A DNA stretch of 64,000 bases from Phyllobates terribilis (lineage: Eukaryota), in contig NW_027362762.1 in NCBI RefSeq assembly GCF_046119375.1, positions 928,388,001 to 928,452,000 on the forward strand, written 5' to 3'. Shown piece after piece: positions 1 through 35,781 of the stretch. The position numbers and the translations under genes were made by a program. The notes beneath the pieces are model-generated. The model worked only from the letters and a program-made list of their open reading frames with translations. It searched no databases and was not told the origin of the DNA. Each line of letters starts with the position of its first letter. Within the stretch, counting starts at the first letter, position 1.

Positions 1-402
1 GAACCTCATCCGGAGGTCTGCCTCAGTAAGATCCTCAAAGACAGCCTGTAACTTTTGGAAGATTGCGGACACTGACTCCTGGTCTGCGGCCGACCATGTT
101 TCCACTTCCCGTTCCGCAGCACCGGTCGGTTGTCCTAATACAACAGCAGCTCTTTGTTTGCCTGTCATGGAGTACATGTCCAAGATACCACATATCTTCC
201 GTTTGAATCCAGACAGGGTATCTGGTTTGCCGTTGTACTGGGGGAGCCACTTTGCTCCAGGAATGTACGGTAGAGTTATAGGAATGACAGGGGTTACAGG
301 CGCTGCTGGTGGAGCGGCCGCCTCGGTCTGCCCGGCGTCGGTCGCTGGTTGTACTTCAGGGACGTTGGCCGGTACTCCGGTGTTGTGCTGTTAGTCGGAC
401 AT
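1..402 (-). pseudogene. Gag N-terminus with an in-frame stop at codon 4
   Basis: Manual translation gives ATG(402) TCC GAC TAA, then ...ITLPYIPGAKWLPQYNGKPDTLSGFKRKI..., matching MPYIPGAAWLPQYSGESHTLSDFKERL of the gag at 31446. Confidence 0.85.
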
Positions 403-765
403 TCTGGCGCCCCCCTAGCTAACCGTGGCCTACCTTCTAGTTTTTCTTCCGGTAGGCCACAGCTCCGCAGGTGACGGTCGTCTTCAGGACCTTGCGTCGC
501 TTGCGTCCTACGCCAGAGAGTTCAGCGACGCTCCTTACAGGGCCTGGCGTTTCCCAGTTTGACGTCGAGGCATGGAGCGTGTCCGGGGCTTTGCGCTCTT
601 TTGCAGGTACGCCCCTCAGTTTCCCACGGTTACACCCTTCTTCTCGCTCGGCGGCCCAGCAATGGCGGCAACCTTCACCACAGTCAATATACAGTTCACT
701 TCAATAAAGGCGCACAGTACCCGGTGGCAACGGGCATAACACTGCGTCGTTGCAGCGGGCACGGG

Positions 766-783
766 ATCCTGTTCGTGACGCCA
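766..783 (-). promoter_or_regulatory. Primer binding site, tRNA-Ser(CGA)-type
   Basis: Plus strand ATCCTGTTCGTGACGCCA matches the 18-nt 3' end (with CCA) of a vertebrate tRNA-Ser-CGA isodecoder as recalled; lies 9 nt from the LTR edge. Confidence 0.85.
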
Positions 784-792
784 GGAAAGAGA

Positions 793-2598
793 TGACTAGC
801 CCAGGGGATGGGGATGACTCGGAACCCGGGCCTTTGCGTGGCCTTTGGGGATGTCGCGGTGGTCGGCTCCCGGGCCCGTACCCTGGGTTCACTCTTTAAA
901 AAAAGGGGAATAATAGATTTCTTGGTTTTATGACAGTTCGTGATGCCACCTGTGGCTTCTGGTGAAAATCACCAGCGCTGCGCAGTCCACTGAGGCCGGT
1001 GATATGGCAGCTCGATGGTATAGCTCCCCACAGGTGAGCTAGGCCTCAGGGCAGCGTACGGAATGGGGAATGCAGGACAGGCGAGAGCCAGCCGGGTCAG
1101 AGCAAGAACAGGGACAGACACGATAGTCACTTCAGTACCTTTTACTGATGGAAATTCAGGCACGTCCCGGAGCACTGTAGGGTGAAGGGTGCATGACAGG
1201 ATCCTCCCCAATGAGCGGGTGTATGGCCTCCTGTTACTTGCCTCTGCGTAGTAAGGTTCTGAACTGCCTGGAGCTAGGCCTAACTTTGTCTCTGTCCTGC
1301 GCTGGCTGACCTTGTGGTAGGGCCTTTTCTTGGAATACACGTACCTCAGCTTAAGGGGCCTATGTGTCTCCCGGCTCTGTTACGTATCAGCACTTTAGCG
1401 TTCCTGGGACTTGTAGTTCTCCAGGGATTCCGGTTATGCCTTACTGGGGTGAGCTAGTTAAGCTCCTCTGTCCCCTATGTACTAACTATCCACTCGCCTT
1501 CGGCCTACTCGGGCCCTCACTAGGCTATACACACTAACGGCAGCTTGCCGCGCTTCACCGATCTTATGGCGCCGGCACACCTTAAGCTCTAACTGAGCTA
1601 CAACTCAACTGAGCTCGACTCTGCATTCAGATGTATACTCGCTGAACTCTCCAGAGGAACTGCTGAATCACTGAGCTCCACTGCAGACTGACCTCTCTTT
1701 GGCTCATCTTCTGCAGGAACTCTCTCAACCGACTTGGCTCTACGTCGACTCCAGACTGAACTGCCTGGCTCCACCTTCCCTTTTTATATCCCTAACGGGC
1801 TCCCTTTGCTGGTCTGAGGTGGAAGGTGGAGATGTGTGAATGTTTATGGGGGCCTCTTGTGGAGGAATCCATCAATGCACACTTCTAGGATCTGTGATAC
1901 CAAGCGCAGCTGGGCGTCACAGATACAGGTGGCGACTCCGCTCCATCCGTATCCCCCTGGGATCCACTAAGCCTCCGGGCTTTTCTGACTGAGACGTGAA
2001 GTGACAAAGTCAGATATCGGGGGCCGGTTACCCGTCTTGCAGCAGGAATCCCTCTGGCTAGGCCAGAGTGAAGAATACAGGTGGCGACTCTGCTCCGTCC
2101 GTATTCCCTGGGATCCTTTTGCCTGTGGAGCCTATCTCCTCTGCTCCCCTCCAAGGCCTTCTTAGAACAGGACCCTGACCAGGTAGAGACACTGGTTAAC
2201 TCTGACCCGCTCCTCGTCTCAAGGCCAGAGTACGAGGACCGCAAATCTTCAGCCAGATGCAGACTCTTGCTGGACCCTGACAGAAGACCCGCAATCAAAG
2301 ACCTTGAACTTAAGATGGGCGTAAATTATATATGATACTGTATGTGCTCCCTGTAAGTGGTTCCTCCACCCTCACCCACTACCTGGTTCCCCCTATCTTT
2401 GGTTCCCCCCATCTCCTTTATCCCGGACCGGGGCAGCACCCTGGTGCATTTCGACCCCCTACAGGACAGGAGTGGTGTAGTGTTGAGTGGTGAAGTGGGG
2501 TCCTGAGTGATGCTCCATCCTTACCTGGGAGAGGAGATACCACACCTCTAACTGAGGTGCAGTACCCCTGTGGCGAATGAACCCTCAGGGGCGCCACA
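793..2598 (-). repeat. 5' LTR of element 1 (~1.8 kb)
   Basis: TG...CA ends (TGACTAGC...GGGGCGCCACA); TATA-like GATATAAAA near 1782-1790 and AGTAAA at 1141-1146 on the minus strand; ~40-bp duplicated U3 block at ~1925-1965 and ~2078-2117. Confidence 0.75.
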
Positions 2599-4107
2599 CA
2601 TATATTTTAATAGAACAGGGGTTCTCTTCCTCAAAATAAAAATAAAAACATCCCTTTAACTGCTACCAATGAGTTAATAATATTTGTGACCTGGACTCTC
2701 CCACAAAAAAAATAATTTTCAAGGGGCACTCCATATCTACTGAAAGAGATATGTTCTGCACAGAGTGCACAGACACAGAATTGCAGAGTTTGGAAAGTAA
2801 AGAGGTGAGTGCGCCGCACCTTGTGTCAATAAATTTTTCCAGTTCAGTTGAGTCCATTACACTGTCGCTCTCTTCTTATACGTGGGCAGGTTGTTTTGGA
2901 AATCGATTGTCATTCCATATTAGTCTGAGTTATTTTATCACTTGTGGCAGCTCGATAACAAATCTACGCTCTTTCATTGTGCTAGTGGTATCAACAATGC
3001 CCAGAGGGGTTCAGCTTAATATAGCGTGCTAAATGGTAATGGAAAATTAACAAGCTCTTCCATGCATGGAGGAAGGTGTAGTAAGGGCAATGTGCTTGTC
3101 CAAGGACATTGGAAATCATTACAGAGACATGGCTGCCAAACTGGCACATTATATAATTTTGTTGTGTACTATATTTGTACAGGGCCGGGAAAACTTATGT
3201 TGGTGGCCTAGGTAAATGAGGCCAATAGCGCCCCTTCCCTCCTAGCAAAAGGATGGGTCAGAAAGTAAGGTGACAGGACCCCTAATGCATCACCCCCTCT
3301 CCGATGGGTCAGGTAACAAGCTCTGACGACCACTTCCACTAGAATTGCAACCGTTTTCACCAAAAAATACACGCAAAAGTTAAAAAAATCGGTTTACTTT
3401 AGGAGTGAGGCTTGAAAGGAGGTAAATTTCGCAGTTAGATGTAGAATTACTCATTGTTTGTGGATCTTTTTTCCCACGATACCAGGGACAAATAGCGATA
3501 TTCATCCCTAATGTAGAAGGAAAAAATTTGAAAATCCGCGCTGCTGGTGAATGAAGGCAATTTTTTTTCCTTCTGCATTATCTAACTTGGTCTCTGGACC
3601 TGTGGACCTTCTGCAGCTGGGATTACACACTTTTCTAATGTTGTGTGATCACAATTTAATCAGGTTAGTGTAACCTTTATTCATAGAATAGACCCATCAT
3701 CACTACATGAATATACCACCAGAAACATCTTCACTACATGAATACTTCAACAGAACTGCCACCTGTACACGAATACAGCATGAGATCTACTATCAGTACA
3801 GGAACATGACACCAAAACCACTATCACTTTTTTTGCAAGCTGTATTAGTCGCATGAAAAACACAAACACCATCAGACTTATCCCTTTAACTATAAAGTGG
3901 TCTGGTTGGTTTCCATTAGGGTATCTATCAAATGCTGGACACCTTGACTGAAACCAAATGGGCCCCCATTATATTTCAGCTATATTAGCTTACATGACCC
4001 TCCTTGGGTTGGACATAAAATATAGTATGGGATGAATATCCTAAGGAAGTAATTAAAAGCACAATAGGGTTTTATCCGGTTTAAAATCGATTCAATGAAA
4101 AAAATTT

Positions 4108-4911
4108 GGGCGCCAAATTTAAATATCGGCCGCGACCAATCACCGATCTTGGCTCCACATTTAAACACCGCTGTGCTCATTGGTCGCCGACGCTGGGCGC
4201 GACCAATCACCGATTTTGGCGCCACATTTAAATAGCGTCCGCGACCAATCAGTACAGCGGTGTTTAAATGTGGAGCCAAGATCGGTGATTGGTCGCGGCA
4301 GATATTTAAATTTGGCGCCAAAATCGGTGATTGGTCGTGGGCAGCGCCAGCGACCAATCAGCGATTTTTAACACAAATGTCCGGACCTTTGTAACACCAT
4401 GCTGATACTATGGGGACATCAGCGGCTAGGGTGTGAAGGGAGGACCGGGGAGCGGCGCTGCGGGTCGGGATACTTCTGCTGCGAGCGCCCGCTCATGTCC
4501 CTGGTTCTCGCAGCGGAAGTATCCGCACAGACAGCGCCGCTCCCCGGTCCTCCCTTCACACCCTAGCCGCTGATGTCCCCACAGTATCCGCATGGTGTTA
4601 CAAAGGTCCGGACATTTGTGTTAAAAATCGCTGATGGGTCGCTGGCGCTGCCCGCGACCAATCACCAATTTGAGCGCCAAATTTAAATATCGGACGCGAC
4701 CAATCACCGATCTTGGCTCCAGATTTAAACACCGCTGTGCTGATTGGTCGCGGCCGATATTTAAATTTGGCGCCCAAATCGGTGATTGGTCGCGGGCAGC
4801 GCCAGCGACCCATCAGCGATTTTTAACACAAATGTCGGACCAATAAGCGACGCGGGATTTCCTGGACAGACAGACAGACAGACAGACGGGATAAGACAAT
4901 TATATAGTAGA
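4108..4911 (-). mobile_element. 3'-truncated non-autonomous Helitron with a large internal palindrome
   Basis: 5' end A|TCTACTATATAA at 4911 followed by (GTCT)n, as in the copies at 8125 and 19631; CCAAT satellite units present; no CTAG 3' end found; left boundary approximate. Confidence 0.75.
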
Positions 4912-5009: not shown

Positions 5010-6096
5010 AACGCATGTACCTATAACTCTCAGTATGTCCTTAACAATGGTAATGTGATGCTGGGAGTTGTTGTTACCAGCAATTATCAGACTATGGACC
5101 ATACACAGATAAACATTTACATCCAGGTACCTTACAGCTGATGTGTTGTCTCATTGGAGTCATTTTTAACCCTTTCATCTCCATCTCGTCCAGATGCCAT
5201 GATGACTTTTCATAGCCTGACCAGGCCCTCATCCCTAGCAAGTACTCCCGTTGGGGCCTATATAATTATCACCAGTAAAGACCCTGGGACTGCACTATCT
5301 TGTCTCTGTGTTCCTTGCAGTGCCAGCACTCACAGCACTAGAACGCCCTGCACAATCACCACCATCATCCAGTCACGCTGCCCTGAAGCTACACTCCTCC
5401 TGTGGGGAGTCACATCACCTTGCTGCACATACCATCAGCTTCAGCAGACTGCTCCGCACCGGCGGTTACCAATAACCGCAATCCACAGGTGGCTTAGTTG
5501 GACTATATATAACAGAGACAAATAGACTACCCTGGTTTGACCACCCTGGGTCACGGACCGGGTCGCCGCCACGGTGACTACAACCTCCAGCATCTACAGG
5601 CCCGGCTCCGGGTGCCCCCTACGGCCCAGGGGGCGCGTCACTAACTTTTCTCTAAACCATGTCCCAAGTTCACGCTGTCCTCTCTCCATATCCATACTGT
5701 GCCCCTTCTTCACACTATGCCCTGATACTGCCCATCATGCTTCCATCTCCAAACTGTGTCCCTTCCTCACATTGCCCCCCCCCACCACACACACACTATG
5801 ATGGTCACCAAAGCCCTCCACACAGTATTATATCCACCATGGCCCCCATACACAGTATAAAGTCCACCACAGCCCCCATATACAACGCATGTACCTACTG
5901 TATAACTCTCAGTATGTCCTTAACAATGGTAATGTGATGCTGGGAGTTGTTGTTATCAGCAATTATCAGACTATGGACCATACACAGATAAACATTTACA
6001 TCCAGGTACCTTACAGCTGATGTGTTGTCTCATTGGAGTCATTTTTAACCCTTTCATCTCCATCTCGTCCAGATGCCATGATGACTTTTCATAGCC
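5010..6096. repeat. Local duplication: A(5010-5217), B(5217-5885), A'(5884-6096), where B copies 6918-7586
   Basis: Direct sequence identity at an offset of 1701 bp (B) and ~875 bp (A), with a few substitutions and one 5-bp indel. Confidence 0.9.
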
Positions 6097-6340: not shown

Positions 6341-7341
6341 TGTGGCACTCCAGGGGGTCTGGTTGCCACAGTGGTAGTAATACCATGTCTGGGAGCAAAA
6401 CAGGAGTTTCCTGGTCAGGGAACACACTATATGCAACACCTCCTGCTCCAGACCAGAAAAGGGGAGGATCCTGCCCTATATAACAGGATCTGGAGGCGGG
6501 GTTAGTCAGTTTAGTCAGAAACAGGGCTGTAGTCCAGTTGAGGACACTAAGGAGCAAGGAGCTGAGGACTGGAACTTGAAGAGCTCATCCTAGCCGGAGT
6601 AGATACAGAGAACCGGACACCGGAGTCCGAGGCTGTGGGACCCTTCAAGCCCAGCAGCAGATACCGCAAGGCAGGAGATTGCAGGTCTCCTGGCCTACAG
6701 AAGCCCGGAGGCTCAGCCACACGAAAGGACCAGTACCGCCACAGAGGAGCGAGGAATACACGGGATCCGAGTCGCCAGCCATACGGGTGAGCACAGCACG
6801 TCACACTCAGGGACGTGGGCTACAACACGACTATAAGCGGGATAGCCAAAAGAGTACAGTCAGAACGGCAGGCCTACAACTTCACCTGGCCAGGGGAATT
6901 CTAGGATTGCTCCCAGACTGACCAGGCCCTCATCCCTAGCAAGTACTCCCGTTGGGGCCTATATAATTATCACCAGTAAAGACCCTGGGACTGCACTATC
7001 TTGTCTCTGTGTTCCTTGCAGTGCCAGCACTCACAGCACTAGAACGCCCTGCACAATCACCACCATCATCCAGTCACGCTGCCCTGAAGCTACACTCCTC
7101 CTGTGGGGAGTCACATCACCTTGCTGCACATACCATCAGCTTCAGCAGACTGCTCCGCACCGGCGGTTACAAATAACCGCAATCCACAGGTGGCTTAGTT
7201 GGACTATATATAACAGAGACAAATAGACTACCCTGGTTTGACCACCCTGGGTCACGGACCGGGTCGCCGCCACGGTGACTACAACCTCCAGCATCTACAG
7301 GCCCGGCTCCGGGTGCCCCCTACGGCCCAGGGGGCGCGTCA
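6341..7341 (+). mobile_element. Solo Gypsy LTR (1001 bp)
   Basis: TGTGGCAC...GCGCGTCA with 4-bp TSD CTAA (6337-6340 and 7342-7345); TATATAA at 6477-6483; AGTAAA at 6975-6980; homologous to LTR 24861-25870. Confidence 0.93.
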
Positions 7342-7479
7342 CTAACTTTTCTCCAAACCATGTCCCAAGTTCACGCTGTCCTCTCTCCATATCCATACTG
7401 TGCCCCTTCTTCACACTATGCCCTGATACTGCTCATCATGCTTCCATCTCCAAACTGTGTCCCTTCCTCACATTGCCCC

Positions 7480-10038: not shown

Positions 10039-11239
10039 TGACGCGCCCCCTGGGACATATTCCTTTTTGAGGGGAATACCCGGCACCGGATCAGATGGGG
10101 GGTTGTAGTCTCCGAGCGGCTGTGACCCGGTCCCGTGCCCAGGGCGTCAAGCTCAGTGTTATGTGGCAGCTTTACAGATGTTACTAAAGTTCTTTTGTGT
10201 CGACTACGCCACCCGTTGTGATGCGGACACTGTGGCCGCCGCTGCTGCAGGGTCCGCTGAGGCTGATGGTGGGTGCGCAGCTTGGTGGGATAACCCCCAA
10301 CGGGAGGGGTATAGCCTCAGAGGGGACAGGCGCAGAGGATGGGGGTTGTGGTGGTGCGATGCAGCCGGCAATGAAGACAGACTCGGGTTGTGCAGTTAAG
10401 GGTGTTTACTTACTGCTGATGTTGTACTGGTCACTCCAGCTGCTAGTGACCACCCGAGCCGTGCTGCGTCCACCAGGTCCTGGATCTGGCCAACCCCCAA
10501 ACAAGTCCAGAGCGTGGCCCTGAGCTCTCCCTCTGTCCTTTCTTCAGCCGTCCCCACCAGTGATTCACCTAGGTCCAGCTCCCTCGGGCCTTCTTTTGGG
10601 ACACCCTTGGCCCTGGGTTCCCTGACCCTTCATGTGGTGTGCCTTCGGGGTGAATGTGGTGGGTGACCGTGACAGACACTGCCCACGGTCTCCGGTCTCT
10701 GGCTGGGGAATGTCTTTGCCCCCACCAGCTTGGGTTCCGGTACCCTCTTGCTGACTCCTCACCCGGTGCTCTAATTTGGGTTCTTGGGTCCCTTCAGTCT
10801 TCCCCCTCTGGGTCTTTCTCTGCTCCACTCTCTCTCTCTCCAGGGCTGCTGTTTCCTTCTCTCTCCTCTCCAACTGACTTGTTCTCAGCGTCTGACCCTG
10901 ATCTAAGTTGGTGCCCTCCTTATATATCCCTCTATGTGTGAGCTCAGGTGACCAGCACCCAATGAGCTCCTATCACTACCCAGACTGCTCCCCCTATCTG
11001 CCCCTACACTACATGGGATGTACCACCCCCCTCCCACTCCAGCCAGGAACAGGCTCGGTTGTACCTGCACATTTCTAAGTGGGAGTACCGTCGGCCTGCT
11101 CCTCTGGAATGGGATGTATGTAGTGCATGCAGTCTATCTGAGCTCAGTTCCACACTCCTTCCTTACCCGGGAGTGGAATATCACACCTCTGGGTTGAGGT
11201 GCAATACCCCTGTAGCAGCCGAATCCTCAGGGTGCTACA
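10039..11239 (-). repeat. 3' LTR of the non-autonomous element
   Basis: TG...CA ends; AGTAAA poly(A)-type signal at 10405-10410 and TATATAA at 10920-10926 (minus strand). Confidence 0.95.
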
Positions 11240-11254
11240 TTCCCCCCTGGTAAA
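11240..11254 (-). promoter_or_regulatory. Polypurine tract
   Basis: TTTACCAGGGGGGAA abuts the LTR TG; the same 15-mer occurs at 25871-25885. Confidence 0.85.
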
Positions 11255-11753
11255 TCACAGCACGTCCTCGGGCTGTAAGACATAAAACACCAAAACATAC
11301 AAAATTTTTATATGAACATATAAAACATATAAACATTATATATATATAAAACTTTTTATATAAACATTCTCGTAGACTTCTCTTGTCTCTGGTTCCTCCT
11401 CCGGACACTGTGCAACGTGTGTCCGGGAAAAGTGCGACAGTCTCTTAGAAAAATCTGGTTTTCTTATAAAACCGGTAGGGGGCGCTTTAGGACGCGCAAC
11501 TATATACAGGGGAAGTTGGAAGTTGGCCGCTCTCAGTCCTCGGCCAGGTAGAGGAAAGGGAATGGCTGCTCACAGTCCTCAGCCTGTAGGATGAAGGGGT
11601 TAACGGGTAAAACAGTTCACTGGTCCCAACGGGGACTATTTTAGCAGCAACAGTTTCAGTTTCTATATACCCCGATTGGGTAACTATTTACAGCTCCTTC
11701 TCTGCCGCACTCAACGGCGTCTTCCTCCTGCTCTTTCTTGATATGATGTTTCT

Positions 11754-13163
11754 TCAGACCCGTCCGGGTCCTCTTGTGATGGGCGCGGTGGTGTTAGCAC
11801 CCGGGTTGCCCGGGCCTTGCGGCCAGGCCTGGGGTATCTGGAAGGTGAAGGGCACCGTAAGAACGGCGGCGCCCTGGGCTACCTGGCCTTGCGGCCAGGC
11901 CGGAGGCTCCGCGGAGGTAGGGGGCGCTGTTGGTGATGCGGCGCCCGGGGGTACTAGGCCTTGCGACCAGGCTGGTGGTATTTCCTGCTTTGTCACGCTC
12001 CGGGTCGAGGCGCGTGACGTCACAGGGGTCGCTGCGGCGGCTTCCGGTCGGGGCCTAGTCCATTGCGGTGACGTGGCGGCTACGGGCACAGCAGGGGGAC
12101 TTTCGGGCTCTGCGACGGGGAGCTGGGGCAGGTGGACGGTTTCTCGGCTTGGGGTATAGGCGTCCCCTTTACCTGCCTCCATGCGTTCGGCTCCCTTCTC
12201 GGCGCCGTCTCCGGCCTTGGGTCCTCCCGCGCCATCCTCAGAGGCGGTCTGCTTCCTCTTCCAGGGTAGCGTGCTCCGTTGACTGGTCTCAGCTTGCTGG
12301 GTCATCTCCCGGCTCCACTCCGCCAGTATCTCGCGCTGTACCCGGGCCATCCTCCTTGCGAGGCCCTCCAGGGCAGTTTGTGCACACTCCCGGTCTCGGG
12401 GGAGCTGCGCTAGGATCTCCGCTAGACCTAGCGGGGTTGTGGACTCTAGCAGGCTCCTGACCATCGGGTCGGTGCTGCTCTGCTCGGCTTCCGGCAGGCT
12501 CCTGGCCAGCGGGCCGGTGCTGCTCTGCCCTCCTTCCTCGGTCTCTAGCAGACTCCTGGCCAGCGGGCCGGTGCTGTTCTGCTTTCTTTCCATCTCCGGG
12601 TGAGCTTCTCCGCTACTCCTTGTTAGACCTCTTGCCTCCGGGTGCGCTCGCTCCAGACTCCTCCAAGCGACACCCATCTTTTCTCTTCTCTTTCGTCTCC
12701 TCCCACTTCGAGGGCGGTCCCGGGGCAACTCGGTGACTGTCAGCTCCAGGGGGAGTTCTTTCACGCTGACAGACACCTCCAGCATCACAGTCTCTGTTGG
12801 TGGGGGCGGTTTCCACTTTTGGCGCCATTTTCTGTCCCTGCCCACGATGGGATGTGGCCTCTTGCCCTCCTTTGGCACGCCCATAATGGCGTCCGCTGCT
12901 CTTCCAAGGCGGGAAATCTGCGGTTTTGGCGGGAAGCGTCGCCCAGTGGCGGGAAACTCTGCAGATGGCGGGAACAAGCTGGAAATGGCGGACAATCGGC
13001 GGGAAACGACTGGTGATGGAGTCCGATGGCGTGGACCCTCCGGAACCGGCAGGAGTCTTCTTTCTGAGGTAAACTTGCACTTTTCTTCAGGCACGCAGTA
13101 CCCGGTTGTTGTGGGCACGTAATCCTGCCGACTACGCCAAAGTTGACGCGCCCCCTGGGACAT
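11754..13163 (-). CDS. 469-aa ORF of unknown function (R/P/A-rich, internal repeats, short coiled-coil-like stretch)
   Basis: ORF track; the only long ORF in the element's sense direction. The ATG lies in U5 and the frame reads through the PBS; the first internal Met is at ~12884. Confidence 0.45.
   Translation of the reverse strand: MSQGARQLWRSRQDYVPTTTGYCVPEEKCKFTSERRLLPVPEGPRHRTPSPVVSRRLSAISSLFPPSAEFPATGRRFPPKPQISRLGRAADAIMGVPKEGKRPHPIVGRDRKWRQKWKPPPPTETVMLEVSVSVKELPLELTVTELPRDRPRSGRRRKRREKMGVAWRSLERAHPEARGLTRSSGEAHPEMERKQNSTGPLARSLLETEEGGQSSTGPLARSLPEAEQSSTDPMVRSLLESTTPLGLAEILAQLPRDRECAQTALEGLARRMARVQREILAEWSREMTQQAETSQRSTLPWKRKQTASEDGAGGPKAGDGAEKGAERMEAGKGDAYTPSRETVHLPQLPVAEPESPPAVPVAATSPQWTRPRPEAAAATPVTSRASTRSVTKQEIPPAWSQGLVPPGAASPTAPPTSAEPPAWPQGQVAQGAAVLTVPFTFQIPQAWPQGPGNPGANTTAPITRGPGRV
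13122..13139 (-). promoter_or_regulatory. Primer binding site, tRNA-Ser(AGA/TGA)-type
   Basis: Plus strand ATCCTGCCGACTACGCCA matches the recalled 3' end of vertebrate tRNA-Ser-AGA plus CCA; lies 4 nt from the LTR. Confidence 0.9.
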
Positions 13164-14344
13164 ATTCCTTTTTGAGGGGAATACCCGGCACCGGATCAGA
13201 TGGGGGGTTGTAGTCTCCGAGCGGCTGTGACCCGGTCCCGTGCCCAGGGCGTCAAGCTCAGTGTTATGTGGCAGCTTTACAGATGTTACTAAAGTTCTTT
13301 TGTGTCGACTACGCCACCCGTTGTGATGCGGACACTGTGGCCGCCGCTGCTGCAGGGTCCGCTGAGGCTGATGGTGGGTGCGCAGCTTGGTGGGATAACC
13401 CCCAACGGGAGGGGTATAGCCTCAGAGGGGACAGGCGCAGAGGATGGGGGTTGTGGTGGTGCGATGCAGCCGGCAATGAAGACAGACTCGGGTTGTGCAG
13501 TTAAGGGTGTTTACTTACTGCTGATGTTGTACTGGTCACTCCAGCTGCTAGTGACCACCCGAGCCGTGCTGCGTCCACCAGGTCCTGGATCCGGCCAACC
13601 CCCAAACAAGTCCAGAGCGTGGCCCTGAGCTCTCCCTCTGTCCTTTCTTCAGCCGTCCCCACCAGTGATTCACCTAGGTCCAGCTCCCTCGGGCCTTCTT
13701 TTGGGACACCCTTGGCCCTGGGTTCCCTGACCCTTCATGTGGTGTGCCTTCGGGGTGAATGTGGTGGGTGACCGTGACAGACACTGCCCACGGTCTCCGG
13801 TCTCTGGCTGGGGAATGTCTTTGCCCCCACCAGCTTGGGTTCCGGTACCCTCTTGCTGACTCCTCACCCGGTGCTCTAATTTGGGTTCTTGGGTCCCTTC
13901 AGTCTTCCCCCTCTGGGTCTTTCTCTGCTCCACTCTCTCTCTCTCCAGGGCTGCTGTTTCCTTCTCTCTCCTCTCCAACTGACTTGTTCTCAGCGTCTGA
14001 CCCTGATCTAAGTTGGTGCCCTCCTTATATATCCCTCTATGTGTGAGCTCAGGTGACCAGCACCCAATGAGCTCCTATCACTACCCAGACTGCTCCCCCT
14101 ATCTGCCCCTACACTACATGGGATGTACCACCCCCCTCCCACTCCAGCCAGGAACAGGCTCGGTTGTACCTGCACATTTCTAAGTGGGAGTACCGTCGGC
14201 CTGCTCCTCTGGAATGGGATGTATGTAGTGCATGCAGTCTATCTGAGCTCAGTTCCACACTCCTTCCTTACCCGGGAGTGGAATATCACACCTCTGGGTT
14301 GAGGTGCAATACCCCTGTAGCAGCCGAATCCTCAGGGTGCTACA
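13144..14344 (-). repeat. 5' LTR of the non-autonomous element
   Basis: Near-identical to 10039-11239 (one T/C difference noticed, at 10487 vs 13592); TATATAA at 14025-14031. Confidence 0.95.
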
Positions 14345-16916: not shown

Positions 16917-17144
16917 TATATACCAGGATGGGGGGACATATATACCAGAAAGGGAGCCATATATACCAGGATGAGGATCATATATACCAGGATGGGGATC
17001 ATATACTGTATACCAGGATGGGGATCATATATACCAGAATGGGGGCCATATATACCAGGATGGGGATCATATACTGTATACCAGGATGGGGATCATATAT
17101 ACCAGGATGGGGGCCATATATACCAGGATGAGGATTATATATAA
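16917..17144. repeat. 22-bp minisatellite (TATACCAGGATGGGG..CATA), resuming at 19632-19770 after the Helitron
   Basis: Tandem units visible directly; the array is split by the Helitron insertion. Confidence 0.9.
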
Positions 17145-24860: not shown

Positions 24861-25870
24861 TAACGCGCCCCCTGGGCCGTGTGTGTAGGGGAATACCCGG
24901 AGTCGGGTCTCTGTGTAATACTGGGGGTTGTAGTCTCCGTGGCGGCGACCCGGTCCCGTGGCTCAGGGTGGTCAAACCAGTGGCGGGTCTGTTTCTTTGG
25001 TTTTGTAATATTTAAATGTCCGACTACGCCACCCGTGGATTGCGGTCACTGAGAACCGCGGCTGCGGGGCAGACCGCTGAGGCTGATGCTGTGTGCGCAG
25101 CAGAGGGTAGTATAACTCCCCATGAGAGGAGTATAGCCTCAGGGCAGCGTCGGTAGATGGTGAGGGTTGTGGTGCATGGGCGCTGCAGAAATGACTCAGA
25201 GTCTGTGCAGTGCAGTTCAGGGTCTTTACTGTTGATAATGAAGAAGGCCCTGCCGGGAGTACTGGCTAACATTAGAGGCCTGGTCAGTCTGTGAGCGAAC
25301 AAGAGTCCCCCTGGCCAGGTGGAGGTATAGGCCTTCCCGTCTGACCGCACTCTTCCTGGCTACCCTGCTGTAGTCGTGTAGTAGCCCACGTCCCTGAGTG
25401 TACCGTGTGGTGCTCACCCATATGGCTGGTGACTTGGGGCCTTTGGTGCCTTCCGCTCCTCGATGGCGGTGCTGGTCCCTTGCGTGTGACTGAGCCTCTG
25501 GGCTTTCTATGGCCAGAGGACCTGAAATCCCCTGCCAGGTGGTTTCTGCTGCTGGGTGTAGATATCCCCACAGCCTCGGACTCCGGTGTCCGGTTCTCTG
25601 CGTCTTCTGCCAGGACGAGTTCGGCTCCAGTCCCTGGTCTTCAGCTCCTGGCTCCTACAGAGCTCCTTGCCGCTGCTCTGTCCCTTTCCCTGGAACTAGA
25701 CTTCTCTGCTAACCCGCCCCAGATCCAGTATATAAAGGGCAGGTTCCTCCCCTCCCTGGACTGGGGCAGGAGGCGTGGCTTACAATAATGCTCCTGACCA
25801 GGAAAACCCATGCTCGCTCTCAGACATGGTATTTCTACCACTGTGGCAACCAGACCCCTGGGGTGCCACA
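24861..25870 (-). repeat. 3' LTR (1010 bp)
   Basis: Ends GGGTGCCACA next to the PPT; left terminus reads TA instead of TG; AGTAAA at 25225-25230; TATA-like TTTATATA near 25730. Confidence 0.92.
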
Positions 25871-26325: not shown

Positions 26326-27708
26326 TTAGATTCTCCAGCGAGCGGGCATCTGACCTCTAGTGCTCCTGGTGGACCTACATAACACACTATCTGGTGGTGT
26401 TCTTTCTGGGTCCCCTGTTTCTACCCCTTGTGTAGTGGGCTCACTAGTGTCTGCACTACAGGTGTTTGGAGCAGTTTTGGGTAGGCTGGGCAGCTTTCTG
26501 CGTACTCTTTGGCTTACTACGGGCACGGCAGGCTCACTACTAGCAGAGGGTTGATTGTCCTGGGCTGCTGGTATGGAATCTTCTGCCTCCAGGGCCGGTT
26601 GCTCTCCCAACTCTACTTGCTCTTCTGTACGCCCATGAGGGGCTGGCTGGAGAAAGGTAAGGACGGGTACCACAATAGCGTTGTTAATTTGTGTCCAGGA
26701 CCGGGGAAATTCTCCGAGTACTGTACTGACCATTTCTTCCCTTTCCTCTGCGGGTTGAGGGCTATCTTGGTCTTCATCAGTGCTTTGCAGCTGCTCGGGA
26801 CACTTCTTCAGGTGGTCTCTGGAGACAGTGGCTGTGGTCTCTCCTCCATCCTTACTGATAACGTAGACTTTCGGATTTTCATGGCTTGAGGGCAGTACTG
26901 TGTATGGTTCTTTCTCCCACTGGTCATCCAACTTATGGAGCCGCCTCTTCCTCTTCAAGACCTGCTCTCCAGGTGCCAGGGGAACAGCGGGAGCATGCTG
27001 GTTGTAAGTCCTCTCTTGCCTTTCTCTTGCTTGACTTCTCTCAACACTCTCCTGCACTTTCCGGTACTGCTGCTGCCATTCTGTATCCCAGTCTGCCTCT
27101 GGCGAGGTGTCCTCGGGGGTCAGGACTCCCATATCCAGGTCAATAGGCAGCTTACCAGGTCTTTCTCTCATTAGGTAAGCCGGGGTGCAGTTGGTGGAAT
27201 TTACTGGGCTGTGGTTATACAAATCCACCAGATCAGGCAGTTTTTCGGGCCACAGACTGCGTTCTTCCAAGGGCAACATTTTCAGCAAGTCTATCACCAC
27301 CTGGTTCATCTTCTCGCACAATCCGTTGGTTTGGGGGTGATAGGGCGTTGTCCTTATCCTTTTGCAGCCATACAGGTTGCAGAACTCCTGGAAGACCTCC
27401 GCTTCGAAGGCTGGACCTTGGTCAGTCAACACTTGCTCCGGATACCCGTGTGGACGGCAGAAGTGCTGCTGGAAGGCTCTAGCTGCGGTCTGAGCTGTTA
27501 AGTCCTTGACAGGGACCACTACCAGGAACCGGGAGTAATGGTCTTCGATGGTGAGGGCGTAGACGCACCCGGACCTACTTGGAGCCAGCTTCACATGGTC
27601 CAGGCTACCAGTTCTAGTGGCTGCTTGGTGATGATGGACTGCAGGGGAGTCTTCTGGCTGGCACGGTCCTTCCTTCTCAGGTTGCACGGGCCGCAGTCTC
27701 TGCACCAT
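26326..27708 (-). pseudogene. Integrase core and C-terminus (frameshifted from upstream pol at ~27606)
   Basis: LDHVKL, IEDHYSRF, TDQGPAFE and HPQTNGLCEKMN motifs; C-terminal GEQVL region. Confidence 0.92.
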
Positions 27709-29608
27709 CTCTCAATGGCCCCTTTCATGCCTACCCAGAAGAACCGTTCACGCAACAGGAACTCCAACTTCTTCCATCCAAAGTGCCCTGCTCCGTCGTG
27801 GTATGCCTTCAGGACCATAGCCGCGTCTCGTCTCGGGACCACTACCTGCCAGGTCAGCTCATGTGTCCGGGAGTTGACAATTCTCCGGCACAGCTTCCCC
27901 TTGTAGAGAAACAGTTTACTCTTCTCCTTCCAGAGCTGTTTGGTTTCTTCCGGAGCGTCTGGGTCAAGGCGGGCATCAGCCTGTGTCAGCATCTCTTTTA
28001 CCGGGTGGACAGCTGGGTCACTGTCCTGCGTCTCCGCCCAGCTGTGGTGGGGTAAGGGATTGAACGTGGCAGAGCGCCTGTCCCTTACACGGTGGGAATA
28101 CTGGGTAATCCCATGACGGTGGAACGCAGGGAGTTCAATCTCTTCCAGTTCTTCTGGATCTTCCCCTCCGTCCAGCAAGTTTGGCATTCTGGACAGGGCA
28201 TCTGCGTTGGCATTTGTGCGTCCCGCCCGGTATTTGATAGTGAACTCATAGTTGGATAGGCGGGCCATCCATCTCTGCTCCAGAGCACCAAGTCTTGCAG
28301 TGTCAAGGTGTGTCAACGGGTTGTTGTCCGTGTACACGGTGAACTTGGAAGAGGCAAGGTAATGTTTAAAGCGCTCTGTCACTGCCCATACCACCGCGAG
28401 GAACTCTAGCTTGAAGGAGCTGTAATTTTCAGGATTCCTTTCTGTGGGCTGGAGCTTCCTGCTGGCATAAGCGATTACCCGTTCTCTGCCCTGTTGGATC
28501 TGGAACAGCACCGCCCCTAGCCCGATGTTGCTCGCGTCTGTGTGGAGAATAAAAGGCTGGCCGTAATCAGGGTACGCCAGGATTTCATCCCCTGTGAGGG
28601 CCATCTTCAGCCGGCGGAAAGACTCATTCTCCAGCTGGTCCCATTTGAAGGGTGGCTTCTGGTTTTTGGCCTTCCTGGACTGGCCTATCAGGAGATCCTG
28701 CATAGGAGCGGCCATTTTGGTGAACCCGGAGATGAATCTTCGGTAGTAGCCTACCAACCCGAGGAACTGCCGCACTTCCTTTATGATGGAGGGTCTTGGC
28801 CAGTCCTTAATCACTGTGATCTTATCAGGATCTGGAGCTACTCCGTCAGCACTCACCACGTGTCCCAGGTACTGTACCTTCGGCTTCAGTAGATGACACT
28901 TGGAGGGTTTCACCTTTAGGCCGTAGCCTGCCAGGGCGTCAAACACTTCTGCCAGATGTCTCAGATGGTCCTCGTATGTTTTGGAATACACAATGACATC
29001 GTCCAGGTATAGCAGGACCGTCTCGAAATTCCAGTGCCCCAGGCAGCACTCCATCAACCGCTGGAAGGTTCCTGGCGCGTTGCAGAGCCCGAACGGCATA
29101 CAGTTGAATTCGCTGAGACCCATCGGGGTGGTGAACGCGGTCTTCTTCTTGTCGGCCTCTGCTACAGGAACCTGCCAGTACCCGCTAGTAAGATCCAAAG
29201 TGGAGAAGAAGTTAGCAGACTTTAATGCAGCTAAAGATTCCTCTATCCTAGGTAACGGGACGCATCTTTGTGTGTGATACGGTTGACCTTCCTGTAGTCT
29301 ACACACATTCTCATGGTGCCATCTTTCTTTTTCACAAGAACTAGTGGAGCTGCCCAGGGGCTACCGCTGTCCCTGATCACCCCAGCCTCCTTCATTTCTC
29401 GCAACATTCCCTTGGCATTCTGATAGTGTGCAGGGGGTACAGGTCGGTATCTTTCCTTTATGGGTGGATGGTCTCCCGTGGGGATGTGGTGTTCTACCCA
29501 CTTTACTTGCCCAAAGTCTAGCGGGTGTTTGCTAAAAACTCTTTCGTACTCCTGAATCACCCGGTAGACTCCCTGTTTGTGGTGTGGGGGAGTGGAGTCG
29601 GTGCCCAC
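27591..29608 (-). pseudogene. Reverse transcriptase, RNase H and integrase zinc finger (1-bp deletion at ~29268)
   Basis: [47 protein letters not shown] and H..GH...C..C motifs. Confidence 0.95.
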
Positions 29609-29623
29609 ATGCAGTTTCTGACA

Positions 29624-30460
29624 TCAGTTCTCCATTTGTTTCTTGGAGCCGTAACCCTCCTCTGGTTGAGATGGAGGCAAGGGTTCCACGGCCTTTATAG
29701 AATTTTGGTTAACGGTGAACAATTTGGCTAGAGTGGCATACCGGGGCAAGTATACTTCTCTTTCCCCAATATTTAGGATGCGGACGGGCACCCTCCCATG
29801 GCGTACATCGACCACCCCCCGTGCTGTCAAAATGGTGGGCCTACTGTCTGAGTAGATGGGTTCTACCATGGCTTGGTAGTCCCTTCCTCTTAACCCGATT
29901 GCAGTCTGGCACCAGATCATCATCTCACTTTTTGGGGGCATGGCGATAGGGAACGGGTAACTCATCCTAACGCTACCAATCTCACCACCAGACAGTTCTA
30001 CCTGTTGCCTTTTCATCAGGGCTCTGATCTCTTTTAGTAGGACACGCTGCTGGCTGGAGCTGGCGTTCACCGCAACCTGCTGTAATATGAGAATTATCTC
30101 TGCAAGACAATTTTCATTAACATTAGTACCCAAGGTTATCTTAGGGTGGCTTTCACGACGGTCAATGTCCACAATAATCAGTCCTTGCGCTGGTAGTTCA
30201 ACTTTACCAAATTTGATGGTCACCTCCTTGAATCCTACCTGCGGTACGGGCTGACCATTGCTTGCGATGATGCTAAAATCGTCGTCTGGGTAGTGGGTAA
30301 TATCCGAGTCATTCCAGTACCGCTTAAAAAGCACATAGGGGATGGTGGTTACCTGTGACCCGGTGTCCAGTAGTGCACTCATAGGAATGCCATCCAGCAC
30401 CACAGCCAAGACCAGTCGCCCCCTACGTACTTATCACGCCAGCTCGATGGGCCTGATGGT
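29624..30460 (-). pseudogene. Aspartic protease region of pol; nonsense codon at 29624-29626
   Basis: ALLDTGSQVT active site; the TGA is in frame with the downstream RT ORF. Confidence 0.92.
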
Positions 30461-30461
30461 C

Positions 30462-31446
30462 TTATGCCTGGGGGGTTGGCCCTCTGCCCCAGGTTGGGCC
30501 CGTTTAAATAACAGTACCTTGCCATATGTCCTGGTTGGTTGCAGCGGCGGCAGATGGGTTGTCCGTCCTCGTCGTAGCGGTTGCTGGGTCTTCCTCTGGA
30601 CGATGGGATCCTCCTCTGTTGGCGCCAAGGGACGTCCTCCGGACTGGAAGCCAGCTGGATCTTTCCTGGAGGGGACACCTGTAAAGACTGCACAGTTCTG
30701 GTTAGCGCGGCAACGCTTTTGGTCAACTCTTGGACCTGATGGTGCAGGGCTGCAGCCGGGGCTTTGTCCAAAGCCTGTGCATCAGCTCCCACATGCTCTG
30801 CAGACAAGGGCGCCGCCTCCTGGTGATAGGTGATAGCAGGGCGCCTGTGGGTTACAGCACCACCTGGTGCCGGTTCTCGGAGCACCTGGATGGCCCTGTC
30901 TTTGAACTGCGCAAAGTCCAATTCAGGGTTCTGCAAGGCCATTACCCGCAACTGGGTTCGGTGGGCGCTGGACTGTAGACCCTCAATGAACTGTTCAGTC
31001 AACAGCTTATCCTCATTCCGCACGCTGTCAGGGTCTGCCTGCTTAATGGCTCTCAGGGCATCCTGCAAATTCAAAGCATAGTCCCGTATACTGTCTTGTG
31101 CCCGCTGTTTGCATCCATAATATTTTAGTTTGATCTCTGCTGAGGTGCGGGTATCAAAAGTGTCCTTTAGATGGGCCAGTATTTCCTTTACAGTCCCCTT
31201 TTCCCTGGCTGACCAGGACTTCACTTCTCTTTGGGCAGCTCCGATTAACTGGCCTGTCAGGATGCTCACTTTTTGTTCCTCGGACAGGGGGTATAATTTG
31301 AATAGGTTATACAGTCTTTCTTTAAAGTCGCTCAGGGTATGCGACTCCCCTGAGTACTGGGGCAACCATGCCGCTCCGGGGATATACGGCATCGTGAACG
31401 GCATCACTGCGGCAGCAGCCGCGCTGGCGGTGGGAGCTTCCTCCAT
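30462..31446 (-). CDS. Gag with CCHC zinc knuckle
   Basis: CRRCNQPGHMARYC knuckle. The ORF track runs to 30379; the natural stop is inferred at 30462-30464 after removing one base from the G run at 30470-30475. Confidence 0.88.
30502..30508 (-). promoter_or_regulatory. -1 ribosomal frameshift slippery site T TTA AAC
   Basis: X XXY YYZ heptamer in the gag frame just after the zinc knuckle, at the gag/pol overlap. Confidence 0.75.
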
Positions 31447-31768: not shown

Positions 31769-31812
31769 AGTCTTTGTTCAGGCACGCAGTACCCGGTGGT
31801 TGTGGGCACAAA

Positions 31813-31830
31813 ATCCTGCCGACTACGCCA
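31813..31830 (-). promoter_or_regulatory. Primer binding site, tRNA-Ser(AGA/TGA)-type
   Basis: ATCCTGCCGACTACGCCA, identical to 13122-13139, followed by the same AAGT spacer. Confidence 0.9.
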
Positions 31831-31834
31831 AAGT

Positions 31835-32196
31835 TGACACGCCCCCTGGGCCGTGTGTGTAGGGGAATACCCGGAGCCGGGTCTCTGTGTAATACTGGGG
31901 GTTGTAGTCTCCGTGGCGGCGACCCGATCCCGAGGCTCAGGGTGGTCAAACCAGTGGCGGATCTGTTTCTTTGGTTTTGTAATATTTAAATGTCTGACTG
32001 TGCCTCCCGTGGATTGCGGTCACTGAGAACCGCCGCTGCGGGGCAGACCGCTGAGGCTGATGTGTGCGCAGCAGAGGGTAGTACAACTCCCCACGGGAGG
32101 AGTATAGCCTCAGGGCAGCGTCGGTAGATGGTGAGGGTTGTGGTGCGTGGGCGCAGCAAAAATGACTCAGAGTCCGTGCAGTGCAGTTCAGGGTCT
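31835..32196 (-). repeat. Truncated 5' LTR (essentially U5 only)
   Basis: Matches 24861-25225 with ~19 differences counted by eye; homology stops abruptly at 32196. Confidence 0.9.

Positions 32197-34144: not shown

Positions 34145-35781
<1,637 letters not shown>

What the first reader, a model, noticed from the sequence alone, without database searches (positions are those of the whole stretch)
766..948. Each LTR carries a second PBS-like site in U5 that co-varies with the primer tRNA
About 145-160 nt inside the U5 end of the LTR, the tRNA-3'-end portion of the PBS is repeated in the same orientation. Elements with the Ser-AGA PBS have CGACTACGCCA (10201-10211, 13306-13316) or CCGACTACGCCA (25020-25031). 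Element 1, with the Ser-CGA PBS, instead has GTTCGTGATGCCA (936-948), 12/13 identical to its own PBS with a CpG-type mismatch. The solo LTR (~7190-7202) and 31995-32006 hold decayed versions. Matching changes at both sites point to selection or to a copying mechanism. Possible roles (inference): a second tRNA-binding site, a decoy for 3' tRNA fragments that target the PBS, or one arm of an RNA switch. I do not recall this being described.
Basis: partly seen in the sequence, partly recalled or inferred. Interest (0 to 1): 0.85.

Follow-up and report, generated by a model that had tools for sequence, protein, structure and literature searches.

The report
Second tRNA-matching site inside frog retrotransposon LTRs
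Several related frog Ty3/Gypsy retrotransposons carry, about 120-180 bases inside the LTR, a short second copy of the site where their primer tRNA-Ser binds, and this copy changed together with the real site when one lineage switched to another tRNA-Ser, which points to an undescribed extra contact between element and primer tRNA.

Summary
Every LTR of this family in the window carries a direct copy of the first 10-13 nt of its own primer-binding site (PBS). The copy lies on the element's sense strand (window minus strand), 143-172 nt inside the U5 end. Exact 11-mers occur 5 times against 0.01 expected by chance.

All LTRs, including element 1, are homologous here, and the copy sits in the same alignment columns. 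It lies directly 3' of a helix supported by two compensatory changes, and directly 5' of the AT-richest patch.

Sequences printed in papers for human tRNAs agree with tRNA-Ser-AGA (equally Ser-TGA) and Ser-CGA.

Two diverged relatives from public assemblies also have the site (L001 10/13, L010 10-nt exact). Four others (L002, L005/6, L011, L012) lack it. The co-variation therefore rests on one PBS switch, in which all six type-specific positions changed alike at both sites.

No conserved internal pairing partner, HIV-type primer activation signal (PAS), larger duplication or complement to the 5' half (seed end) of 3' tRNA fragments was found.

Best reading (confidence about 0.4): an auxiliary docking site for the 3' end of the primer tRNA. 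Main rival: an alternative or former priming site. Whether the site lies in R, U5 or U3 is unresolved; R or U5 is favoured.

The parts
766..783 (-). E1 primer-binding site (18 nt, tRNA-Ser-CGA type)
   Evidence: It matches the tRF-Ser-CGA-013 sequence printed in PMC9659620.
936..948 (-). E1 inner PBS-like site, 12/13 identical to the first 13 nt of the E1 PBS
   Evidence: 2 matches in the window against 0.02 expected. Same alignment columns as the other inner sites.
891..935 (-). E1 AT-rich patch directly 3' (sense) of the inner site; possible poly(A) signal region, or TATA-like
   Evidence: It is the AT-richest 30-nt window in the last 400 nt of the LTR. Its function is inferred.
949..1060 (-). 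E1 conserved domain 5' (sense) of the inner site, closed by helix P1 (3' strand 949-955, 5' strand 1028-1034)
   Evidence: RNAalifold and pair counts. Two of the seven P1 pairs show compensatory changes among lineages.
793..2600 (-). E1 5' LTR. The U5 end is at 793. The upstream end near 2600 is inferred from the shared LTR start motif only; the 3' LTR is outside the window.
   Evidence: TATAAA in a GC-rich context at 1783-1788.
1..297 (-). E1 gag N-terminal part (cut by the window edge), no stop codons in the 99 codons seen
   Evidence: tblastn with frog gag proteins, 36-48% identity.
10039..14344 (-). E2: complete non-autonomous element. LTRs at about 10039-11240 and 13144-14344, 99.9% identical; 1.9 kb interior without gag or pol; flanked by TATA on both sides.
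10201..10211 (-). E2 3' LTR inner site (11/11)
13306..13316 (-). E2 5' LTR inner site (11/11)
13122..13139 (-). E2 PBS (tRNA-Ser-AGA/TGA type), 4 nt after the LTR end
   Evidence: tRNA 3' end as printed in PMC10359600.
24861..25871 (-). E3 3' LTR, preceded (sense) by a polypurine tract; TATATA at 25729-25734
25020..25031 (-). E3 3' LTR inner site (12/12)
26326..30409 (-). E3 pol (PR-RT-RNase H-IN), broken: 2 frameshifts and 1 in-frame stop relative to an intact relative
   Evidence: Pfam. tblastn against the intact pol of L002, counts only.
30379..31446 (-). E3 gag, PNMA-type, open reading frame of 355 codons
   Evidence: Pfam PF14893. 83% identical to a Phyllobates terribilis protein.
31813..31830 (-). 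E3 PBS (tRNA-Ser-AGA/TGA type)
31835..32196 (-). E3 5' LTR, truncated on its upstream side; 94.5% identical to the 3' LTR
31994..32005 (-). E3 5' LTR inner site, decayed (8/12; two of the four changes are at CpG)
6341..7341 (+). Solo LTR of the same group, flanked by CTAA on both sides; inner site 7191-7202 (10/12)
5490..5501 (+). Copy of the solo-LTR inner site inside a segmental duplicate (5214-5885 equals 6915-7586, 99.3%)

Best explanation
The motif is an inherited second copy of the 5' part of the PBS. It can pair with the last 10-13 nt of the same tRNA-Ser that primes the element: the 3' strand of the acceptor stem, the discriminator base and CCA.

It lies in the ~430-nt module shared by the autonomous E3 and the non-autonomous E2. 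That module comprises the last ~370 nt of the LTR, the PBS and about 60 nt of leader, and I infer it to be the cis-acting region. Within it the site sits directly 3' of a conserved helix and directly 5' of an AT-rich, probably unstructured stretch.

I think it most likely serves as an auxiliary docking site that captures or holds a primer tRNA-Ser on the genomic RNA, close to the initiation region. If the site lies in R, as the upstream TATA boxes suggest, this would happen at both ends of the RNA. Selection for pairing with the primer tRNA would then explain why it changed together with the PBS.

Shown: the sequence, its position, its homology across lineages, the co-switch, and its intactness in a young copy.
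Inferred: that tRNA binds there, that binding helps priming or tRNA packaging, and that the site is in R.
For: - Exact matches are far above chance.
- The site occupies the same alignment columns in E1, E2, E3, the solo LTR, L001 and L010.
- All six type-specific positions differ in parallel at the PBS and the inner site.
- The site is recognisable in E1, L001 and L010. Their gag proteins are only 31-47% identical. Their flanking LTR sequence is 28-53% identical in a forced alignment, close to what unrelated sequence gives.
- L010 has a 10-nt exact prefix at -157; analytic expectation is about 0.001 per LTR.
- E2, with LTRs 99.9% identical, keeps a perfect site. Only the LTR tail, PBS and early leader are conserved between E2 and E3.
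- Helix P1, which abuts the site, has two compensatory pairs, so the region acts at the level of single strands.
- The match covers tRNA positions 64/66-76. PBS segments of 8-10 nt are reported for Ty3 and Ty1 (my own recollection; PMC5371799, describes their bipartite PBS).
- A second tRNA-complementary motif that must be co-adapted with the PBS is established for HIV-1 (PMC1865047).
Against: - There is only one co-switch event.
- The same tRNA end cannot pair with both sites at once, so two tRNA molecules or a hand-over are needed. No precedent for that is known to me.
- Four related lineages do without the site.
- In E1 and L001 the site carries 1 and 3 mismatches, while the adjacent PBS with its CpGs is perfect. 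That looks like relaxed constraint.
- A stepwise change of six adjacent bases by point mutation is slow, which hints at a templated event.
- Predicted accessibility of the site is inconsistent between elements.
- No direct evidence of tRNA binding exists.
Confidence: 0.4

Rival explanations
1. The site is an alternative or former priming site. It would be an older PBS, from a time when the LTR ended just before it, or a still occasionally used second initiation site. In this reading the two sites stay alike because each can be re-copied from the tRNA when it is used. No docking function is needed.
For: - A 10-13 nt complement that includes CCA is long enough to prime, by comparison with Ty1 and Ty3 (my own recollection for the lengths; for the bipartite PBS).
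- In E3, the solo LTR and E1 the site is preceded by CA plus 4 nt. That is the same geometry as the real LTR end plus spacer in E2 and E3.
- A block change of six adjacent bases looks templated.
- With one indel, L010 matches its PBS over about 15 nt, reaching into the T stem. This suggests origin as a longer copy.
- The patchy distribution and mismatches in E1 and L001 fit a non-essential element.
Against: - No copy matches beyond 13 nt without gaps, whereas copying from tRNA gives 18.
- No LTR in the sample ends at the inner site.
- The CA-plus-4 geometry fails in E2, L001 and L010.
- Working through reverse transcription from this site gives products that lack the last ~150 nt of one or both LTRs (my own reasoning).
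- The new tRNA shares only 6 nt with the old inner site, so re-copying by mispriming there is hard to start.
- There is no larger duplicated unit around the two sites.
Confidence: 0.25
2. The site is one arm of an intramolecular RNA switch. The inner site and the PBS compete for a common complementary segment, giving different folds at the 5' and 3' ends of the RNA, for example to control polyadenylation or initiation.
For: - The site abuts the covarying helix P1.
- In AGA-type LTRs, RNAalifold pairs GUAGUC of the site with GGCUAU of the upstream block, with one double change in the solo LTR.
- The AT-rich patch next to the site could be the poly(A) signal.
Against: - E1 has no equivalent partner for its type-specific bases.
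- No tRNA-sense segment with 10 or more of 13 matches occurs at a shared position.
- Minimum-energy partners differ in every element.
Confidence: 0.08
3. The site is a decoy or target for 3' tRNA fragments, the host small RNAs that act on PBS sequences.
For: 3' tRNA fragments repress LTR elements through PBS complementarity (PMC7472051 and PMC12853362). The site is complementary to the 3' end of such fragments.
Against: - The site lacks complementarity to the 5' half (seed end) of 18-22 nt fragments.
- An extra target on the same RNA would add repression rather than relieve it.
- Nothing in the sequence data speaks for it.
Confidence: 0.06
4. The site is a cis-regulatory DNA or RNA element unrelated to tRNA, such as a promoter-proximal factor site next to a TATA-like box. 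Its likeness to the PBS would then be accidental or carried along by recombination.
For: - TATA-like strings follow the site in E3, the solo LTR and E1.
- In L010 the site overlaps the perfect palindrome GTCACGTGAC, whose core is an E-box (general knowledge).
Against: - It cannot explain why six type-specific bases match the element's own PBS in both types.
- The young E2 has no TATA-like string there.
- Stronger TATA boxes in a shared GC-rich context lie far upstream in six lineages.
Confidence: 0.08

Closest known systems
HIV-1 primer activation signal (PAS) in U5 (PMC1865047)
   Same: It is a second short motif upstream of the PBS in the leader that pairs with the primer tRNA. It has to be adapted together with the PBS when tRNA usage is switched.
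   Different: PAS pairs with the T-psi-C arm, so one tRNA binds PBS and PAS together, and it lies about 50 nt upstream. Here the motif repeats the acceptor-end part of the PBS itself, so one tRNA cannot bind both, and it lies 116-177 nt upstream. No conserved complement of the T-arm 5' side was found.
Bipartite PBS of yeast Ty3, and extended PBS boxes of Ty1 (PMC5371799)
   Same: Ty3/Gypsy-type (Ty3) and Ty1/copia-type (Ty1) elements with more than one tRNA-complementary segment. In Ty3 one segment lies in U3 at the other end of the RNA.
   Different: In Ty1 and Ty3 the extra segments pair with the T-psi-C and D arms of the same tRNA molecule, and the acceptor-end segment is short. Here the PBS is a full 18-21 nt and the extra segment duplicates the acceptor-end complement.
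Engineered retroviral vectors with two primer-binding sites (my own recollection of work by Voronin and Pathak; not retrieved here)
   Same: Two sites on one RNA are complementary to the same tRNA end. Initiation at both was reported.
   Different: Those are artificial constructs with two full 18-nt sites. The site here is natural, shorter, lies inside the LTR, and is conserved across diverged lineages.
tRNA-like sequence in HIV-1 U3-R proposed to aid minus-strand transfer (my own recollection of Piekna-Przybylska et al. 2010; not retrieved here)
   Same: A primer-related sequence in the LTR, away from the PBS.
   Different: That element is tRNA-sense and can pair with the PBS. The site here is PBS-sense and pairs with the tRNA.
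Tf1-type self-priming
   Same: An LTR sequence related to the PBS.
   Different: In Tf1 the RNA 5' end is complementary to the PBS (an inverted repeat). Here the two sites are direct repeats.

Membership tests
Ty3/Gypsy LTR retrotransposon (host elements) | Gene order gag, PR, RT, RNase H, IN | tested here: met
   Pfam hits on the E3 reading frames in that order. Intact relatives L002, L005, L010 and L012 show the same order.
Ty3/Gypsy LTR retrotransposon (host elements) | LTRs starting TG and ending CA, a PBS complementary to a tRNA 3' end just after the 5' LTR, a polypurine tract before the 3' LTR, and a short target duplication | tested here: met
   - E2 LTRs run TG...CA.
- The PBS lies 4 nt after the LTR.
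- E3 has a polypurine tract before its 3' LTR.
- Flanking repeats are TATA (E2) and CTAA (solo LTR).

HIV-type primer activation signal | Motif complementary to the T-psi-C arm (anti-PAS), a different part of the tRNA from the one the PBS binds | tested here: not met
   The site is complementary to tRNA positions 64/66-76, which is the PBS-binding part. No conserved 8-mer complementary to the T-arm 5' side occurs in the last ~320 nt of any LTR.
HIV-type primer activation signal | Co-adaptation with the PBS when the primer tRNA changes | tested here: met
   Six of six type-specific positions changed in parallel. This is one event only.
Ty3-type bipartite PBS | Short acceptor-end segment at the 5' end plus T-arm and D-arm complementary segments in U3 | tested here: not met
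   The PBS is 18-21 nt and the second segment repeats the acceptor-end complement. A scan of the whole LTR against the full tRNA was not done, because the long tRNA sequence was not typed into a script.
Functional primer-binding site (second initiation site) | Complementarity to the tRNA 3' end including CCA | tested here: met
   10-13 nt including the TGG that pairs with CCA.
Functional primer-binding site (second initiation site) | Lies at the boundary of the LTR, with 18 nt renewed from the tRNA in each cycle | tested here: not met
   The site is 143-172 nt inside the LTR. No copy matches beyond 13 nt ungapped. No LTR in the sample ends there.
Functional primer-binding site (second initiation site) | cDNA starts at the site | not testable with these tools
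   This needs sequence data on naturally occurring cDNA ends.
3' tRNA-fragment target site | Complementarity to the 5' (seed) half of 18-22 nt 3' fragments | tested here: not met
   The match stops at tRNA position 64-66. Bases beyond it do not match the PBS.
Tf1-type self-primer | LTR sequence complementary (inverted) to the PBS | tested here: not met
   The two sites are direct repeats. No tRNA-sense match with 10 or more of 13 bases occurs at a shared position.

The most novel reading that the evidence does not exclude
A lineage of vertebrate Ty3/Gypsy elements needs two molecules of the same primer tRNA on each genomic RNA, or a hand-over between two sites. The second site would be an obligatory acceptor-end docking site near the end of R. 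It would co-evolve with the PBS and take part in primer selection, tRNA packaging or strand transfer. No such mode of primer use has been described for any retroelement.
Probability: 0.25. Interest if true: 0.8.

Novelty: new variant of a known kind. Interest (0 to 1): 0.55.

Why it matters
Extra contacts between primer tRNA and genomic RNA are known for HIV-1, avian retroviruses, Ty1 and Ty3. All of them use other parts of the tRNA. A natural, conserved repeat of the acceptor-end complement, which followed the PBS through a primer switch, would be a new solution to the same problem.

It also offers a natural experiment on how retroelements change primers. These families are very abundant in the giant genomes of poison frogs, so the question can be settled by counting copies alone.

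On the practical side, the motif can mislead LTR annotation tools that look for a PBS. It also adds PBS-like targets inside solo LTRs and in both LTRs, which matters for studies of tRNA-fragment targeting.

Tried and rejected
- Frog genome DNA for the closest gag homologues (Phyllobates, Anomaloglossus, Dendrobates, Ranitomeya): located, but no DNA was returned because the files are too large.
L008 and L009 gave no LTR.
- Scan of viral contigs with the RT piece: nothing found.
- The one metagenome scan, with a 15-nt flank pattern: 119 or more chance hits, none homologous to the LTRs.
- ARAGORN: no tRNA gene in the window, so frog tRNA-Ser could not be read. Identity rests on human sequences printed in two papers.
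- Conserved pairing partner for the site: none.
- U5 hairpin between site and PBS: a closing helix is conserved but shows no compensatory change. Folding energy is no better than shuffles in E1, E2, E3 and the solo LTR, and is significant only in L001 and L010.
- Larger tandem duplication of a U5-PBS unit: rejected.
- HIV-type PAS: not found.
- Canonical AATAAA or ATTAAA: absent from the E1, E2, E3 and solo LTRs, so the R/U5 border stays inferred.
- Transcript ends from assembly contigs: L002 and L005 are circular graph walks that start at the LTR start, so they say nothing about the transcription start. L001 starts 477 nt upstream of the PBS in sequence resembling the region after the upstream TATA of E1 and E3, but the library type is unknown.
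- Literature searches for a natural second PBS copy in an LTR found none.
Full report
**1. What is in the window**

The first 34 kb hold several copies of one group of Ty3/Gypsy LTR retrotransposons, all but one on the minus strand. They are embedded in a 67-bp satellite and sit next to a Tc1-like transposon.

- E3 (about 24861-32196) has a PNMA-type gag and PR-RT-RNase H-IN. Its pol is broken by 2 frameshifts and 1 stop, counted against an intact relative. Its 5' LTR is truncated on the upstream side.
- E2 (10039-14344) is a complete non-autonomous element. Its LTRs are 99.9% identical, and it has a 1.9-kb interior without gag or pol.
- E1 enters the window with its gag start, leader, PBS and 5' LTR only.
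- A solo LTR lies on the plus strand at 6341-7341, between CTAA repeats. Part of it is duplicated.

The closest gag proteins are from poison frogs: Phyllobates terribilis at 83%, then Anomaloglossus, Dendrobates and Ranitomeya. The host is therefore most likely a dendrobatid frog.

**2. The observation**

The + strand shows the tRNA-sense sequence. The PBSs are at 766-783, 13122-13139 and 31813-31830.

Inside every LTR, 143-172 nt from its U5 end, the first 10-13 nt of that element's own PBS recur in the same orientation:

| LTR | Position | Match to own PBS |
|---|---|---|
| E1 | 936-948 | 12/13 |
| E2 (both LTRs) | 10201-10211, 13306-13316 | 11/11 |
| E3 3' LTR | 25020-25031 | 12/12 |
| E3 5' LTR | 31994-32005 | 8/12 |
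| Solo LTR and its duplicate | 7191-7202, 5490-5501 | 10/12 |

Shuffles give 0.01 expected matches for the 11-mer against 5 observed, and 0.02 against 2 for the E1 13-mer.

**3. Homology and co-variation**

MAFFT shows that the last ~330 nt of the E1 LTR are homologous to those of E2, E3 and the solo LTR. The inner site falls in the same columns in all of them.

The two PBS types share TGGCGT and CAGGAT and differ at all six positions between (CACGAA versus AGTCGG). The inner sites differ at the same six positions in the same way. This cannot be chance.

E2, E3 and the solo LTR are related (about 70-75% identical in this part), so they count as one lineage. The data therefore document one co-switch, not several.

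**4. tRNA identity**

No tRNA gene is in the window and no tRNA database was available.

- A table in PMC10359600 prints human tRNA-Ser-AGA-1-1 and tRNA-Ser-TGA-2-1. Both end in the sequence complementary to the E2/E3 PBS over 19 nt.
- PMC9659620 prints a fragment named tRF-Ser-CGA-013 that equals the E1 motif.

AGA and TGA cannot be told apart, and frog tRNAs were not seen.

The inner sites cover tRNA positions 66-76 (E2), 65-76 (E3) and 64-76 (E1). That is the 3' strand of the acceptor stem, the discriminator, CCA, and up to two bases of the T stem.

**5. Relatives**

A profile search of 1.8 billion proteins gave many PNMA-type gag relatives. DNA could be fetched only for short public assembly contigs.

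| Locus | Gag identity to E3 | PBS type | Inner site |
|---|---|---|---|
| L001 | 58% | Ser-CGA, perfect over 21 nt | 116 nt upstream, 10/13; two of the three mismatches are CpG-type |
| L010 | 30% | Ser-CGA | 10-nt exact copy 157 nt upstream; about 15 nt alike if one indel is allowed |
| L002 | 44% | Ser-CGA | none (best 8/13) |
| L005/L006 | 37% | Ser-CGA | none (best 8/13) |
| L011, L012 | 24% and 28%, a separate clade | AGA-like | none |

The Ser-CGA type is therefore the common state in the ingroup. The switch to the AGA/TGA type happened on the branch leading to E2, E3 and the solo LTR.

The inner site is old but patchy. Either it was lost at least twice, or it arose more than once.

Around the site, E1, L001 and L010 are only 28-53% identical in a forced alignment, while the site itself stays recognisable.

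**6. Where the site lies in the LTR**

- E1, E2, E3, the solo LTR, L002 and L005 each have a strong TATA box in a similar GC-rich context. It lies 580-1000 nt upstream of the LTR end.
- The L001 contig starts, without a TATA box, 477 nt upstream of its PBS. The sequence there resembles what follows those TATA boxes.
- This favours a start of transcription far upstream, which puts the inner site well inside the transcript.
- No canonical poly(A) signal exists in the E1, E2, E3 or solo LTRs. The AT-richest patch of the last 400 nt begins right after the inner site. In L005 an AATAAA sits at a comparable distance from the PBS.

I therefore place the site near the 3' end of R, with U5 being the ~110-130 nt that follow. 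This is inference.

The AT-rich patch also looks TATA-like in E3, the solo LTR and E1. If it were the promoter, the site would be in U3 and present only near the 3' end of the RNA. I rate R/U5 against U3 at roughly 2:1.

**7. Structural context**

RNAalifold on five LTR copies predicts a 7-bp helix (P1) whose 3' strand ends at the first base of the inner site.

- Two of its pairs show compensatory double changes: CCCGUGG/CCACGGG in E3, CCCGUUG/CAACGGG in E2, and CCUGUGG/CCACAGG in the solo LTR and E1. The region is therefore constrained as a single strand.
- The type-specific bases of the inner site have no conserved partner. The weak pairing with an upstream GGCUAU in AGA-type LTRs has no counterpart in E1.
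- The stretch between the AT patch and the LTR end can close into a long hairpin. However, it shows no compensatory changes, and its energy is no better than shuffles in the window copies.
- The 150 nt upstream of the inner site are not similar to the 150 nt upstream of the PBS. Only the 10-13 nt (perhaps 15 nt) are repeated.

**8. What it most likely is**

A six-base block that follows the PBS through a primer switch must either bind the same partner as the PBS or be copied from it. That partner is the 3' end of the primer tRNA, or its DNA image.

*Preferred reading (about 0.4): auxiliary docking site.* The site would be kept by selection as an auxiliary docking site for tRNA-Ser.
- It lies in the only LTR part conserved between an autonomous element and the non-autonomous element that shares its cis-acting module.
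- It is intact in the one demonstrably young copy.
- It has survived in lineages whose LTRs are otherwise unalignable.
- It has the length of working PBS segments in yeast elements (lengths from my own recollection).
- Co-adaptation of a second tRNA-binding motif with the PBS is established for the HIV-1 PAS.
- Stepwise extension of pairing from the shared TGGCGT seed gives a plausible path for selection.

*Main rival (about 0.25): alternative or former priming site.* The block-wise change, the longer gapped match in L010, the CA-plus-4-nt geometry before the site in some copies, and the patchy distribution all fit this. Against it:
- No copy reaches 18 nt.
- No LTR ends at the site.
- By my reasoning, priming there gives products lacking the last ~150 nt of an LTR.
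- The new tRNA shares only 6 nt with the old site.

*Minor rivals.* An RNA switch, a decoy for tRNA fragments, and an unrelated regulatory site each fail at least one test.

**9. Against any strong claim**

- There is one co-switch only.
- Four relatives lack the site.
- E1 and L001 carry mismatches at the site while their PBSs, including their CpGs, are perfect. Because the PBS is renewed from the tRNA at each cycle and the inner site is not, those mismatches were probably already present in the active parents. The site therefore tolerates imperfection.
- The E3 5' LTR copy has four changes in 12 nt against 5.5% overall LTR divergence (two at CpG; rough probability 0.005, post hoc).

**10. 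Novelty**

Six literature searches found no description of a natural second copy of the PBS inside an LTR. The kind of thing, an extra primer tRNA contact that co-evolves with the PBS, is known. The form, a repeat of the acceptor-end complement that a single tRNA cannot occupy together with the PBS, is not. I file it as a new variant of a known kind and give it moderate interest.

Early in my reasoning I began to recall a tRNA-Ser sequence from memory. I stopped and did not use it. The tRNA identities rest only on the sequences printed.

The consensus lines that the alignment tools printed were not used. For the broken E3 pol only counts are given.

Noticed in passing
window 31994-32005 versus 25020-25031: The two LTRs of E3 differ at 4 of the 12 inner-site bases, with none in the ~40 nt on either side. 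The LTRs as a whole differ by 5.5%. Two of the changes are at CpG. The cluster is unusual (rough probability 0.005, post hoc) and unexplained.
   Followed up: partly
window about 503-515 (minus strand), 268 nt downstream of the E1 PBS: The E1 leader contains TGGCGTAGGACGC. Its first 8 nt equal the start of the other (AGA-type) PBS. Expected by chance about 0.07 times, so it is probably coincidence.
   Followed up: partly
L010 1272-1285: The inner site of this distant relative overlaps the perfect 10-nt palindrome GTCACGTGAC, which has an E-box core. A second, DNA-level role is possible.
   Followed up: no
window 11241-13143: The interior of the non-autonomous E2 has no gag or pol. It carries a 45-nt GC-rich tandem repeat (12449-12583) and repeated GGCGGGAA-like motifs (about 12900-13010).
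   Followed up: partly
window 8617-9989 and 17194-19209: Two arrays of a 67-bp satellite, partly in opposite orientation, flank E2 and the Tc1-like transposon. Related units also occur at 4127-4801.
   Followed up: no
window 15285-16918: Tc1/mariner-type transposon. It has a 350-codon open transposase frame (15450-16502, minus strand) with HTH_Tnp_Tc3_2 and DDE_3 domains. Its terminal inverted repeats (15285-15558 and 16645-16918) are 98% identical.
   Followed up: partly
window 5214-5885 and 6915-7586: A 672-bp segmental duplication (99.3%) carries the U5 half of the solo LTR plus 245 nt of flank. A further 213-bp repeat lies at 5010-5217 and 5884-6096.
   Followed up: no
L011 81-11888: A relative assembled as a tandem array (element, one shared LTR, element; period 6185 nt, 94.5% identical). 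Its PBS lies only 17 nt before the gag start codon.
   Followed up: no
L002 and L005 (whole contigs): Both public contigs start exactly at the first base of the LTR and end 30 nt into it. They are circular walks through the assembly graph, not evidence of circular DNA or of transcript ends.
   Followed up: yes
window 34143-34361 and 35561-35783; 52291-52596 and 54034-54316: An inverted repeat pair (94% identical) and a diverged direct repeat pair (72%) lie in the AT-richer right half of the window. They may be ends of other transposons.
   Followed up: no
   Followed up: no
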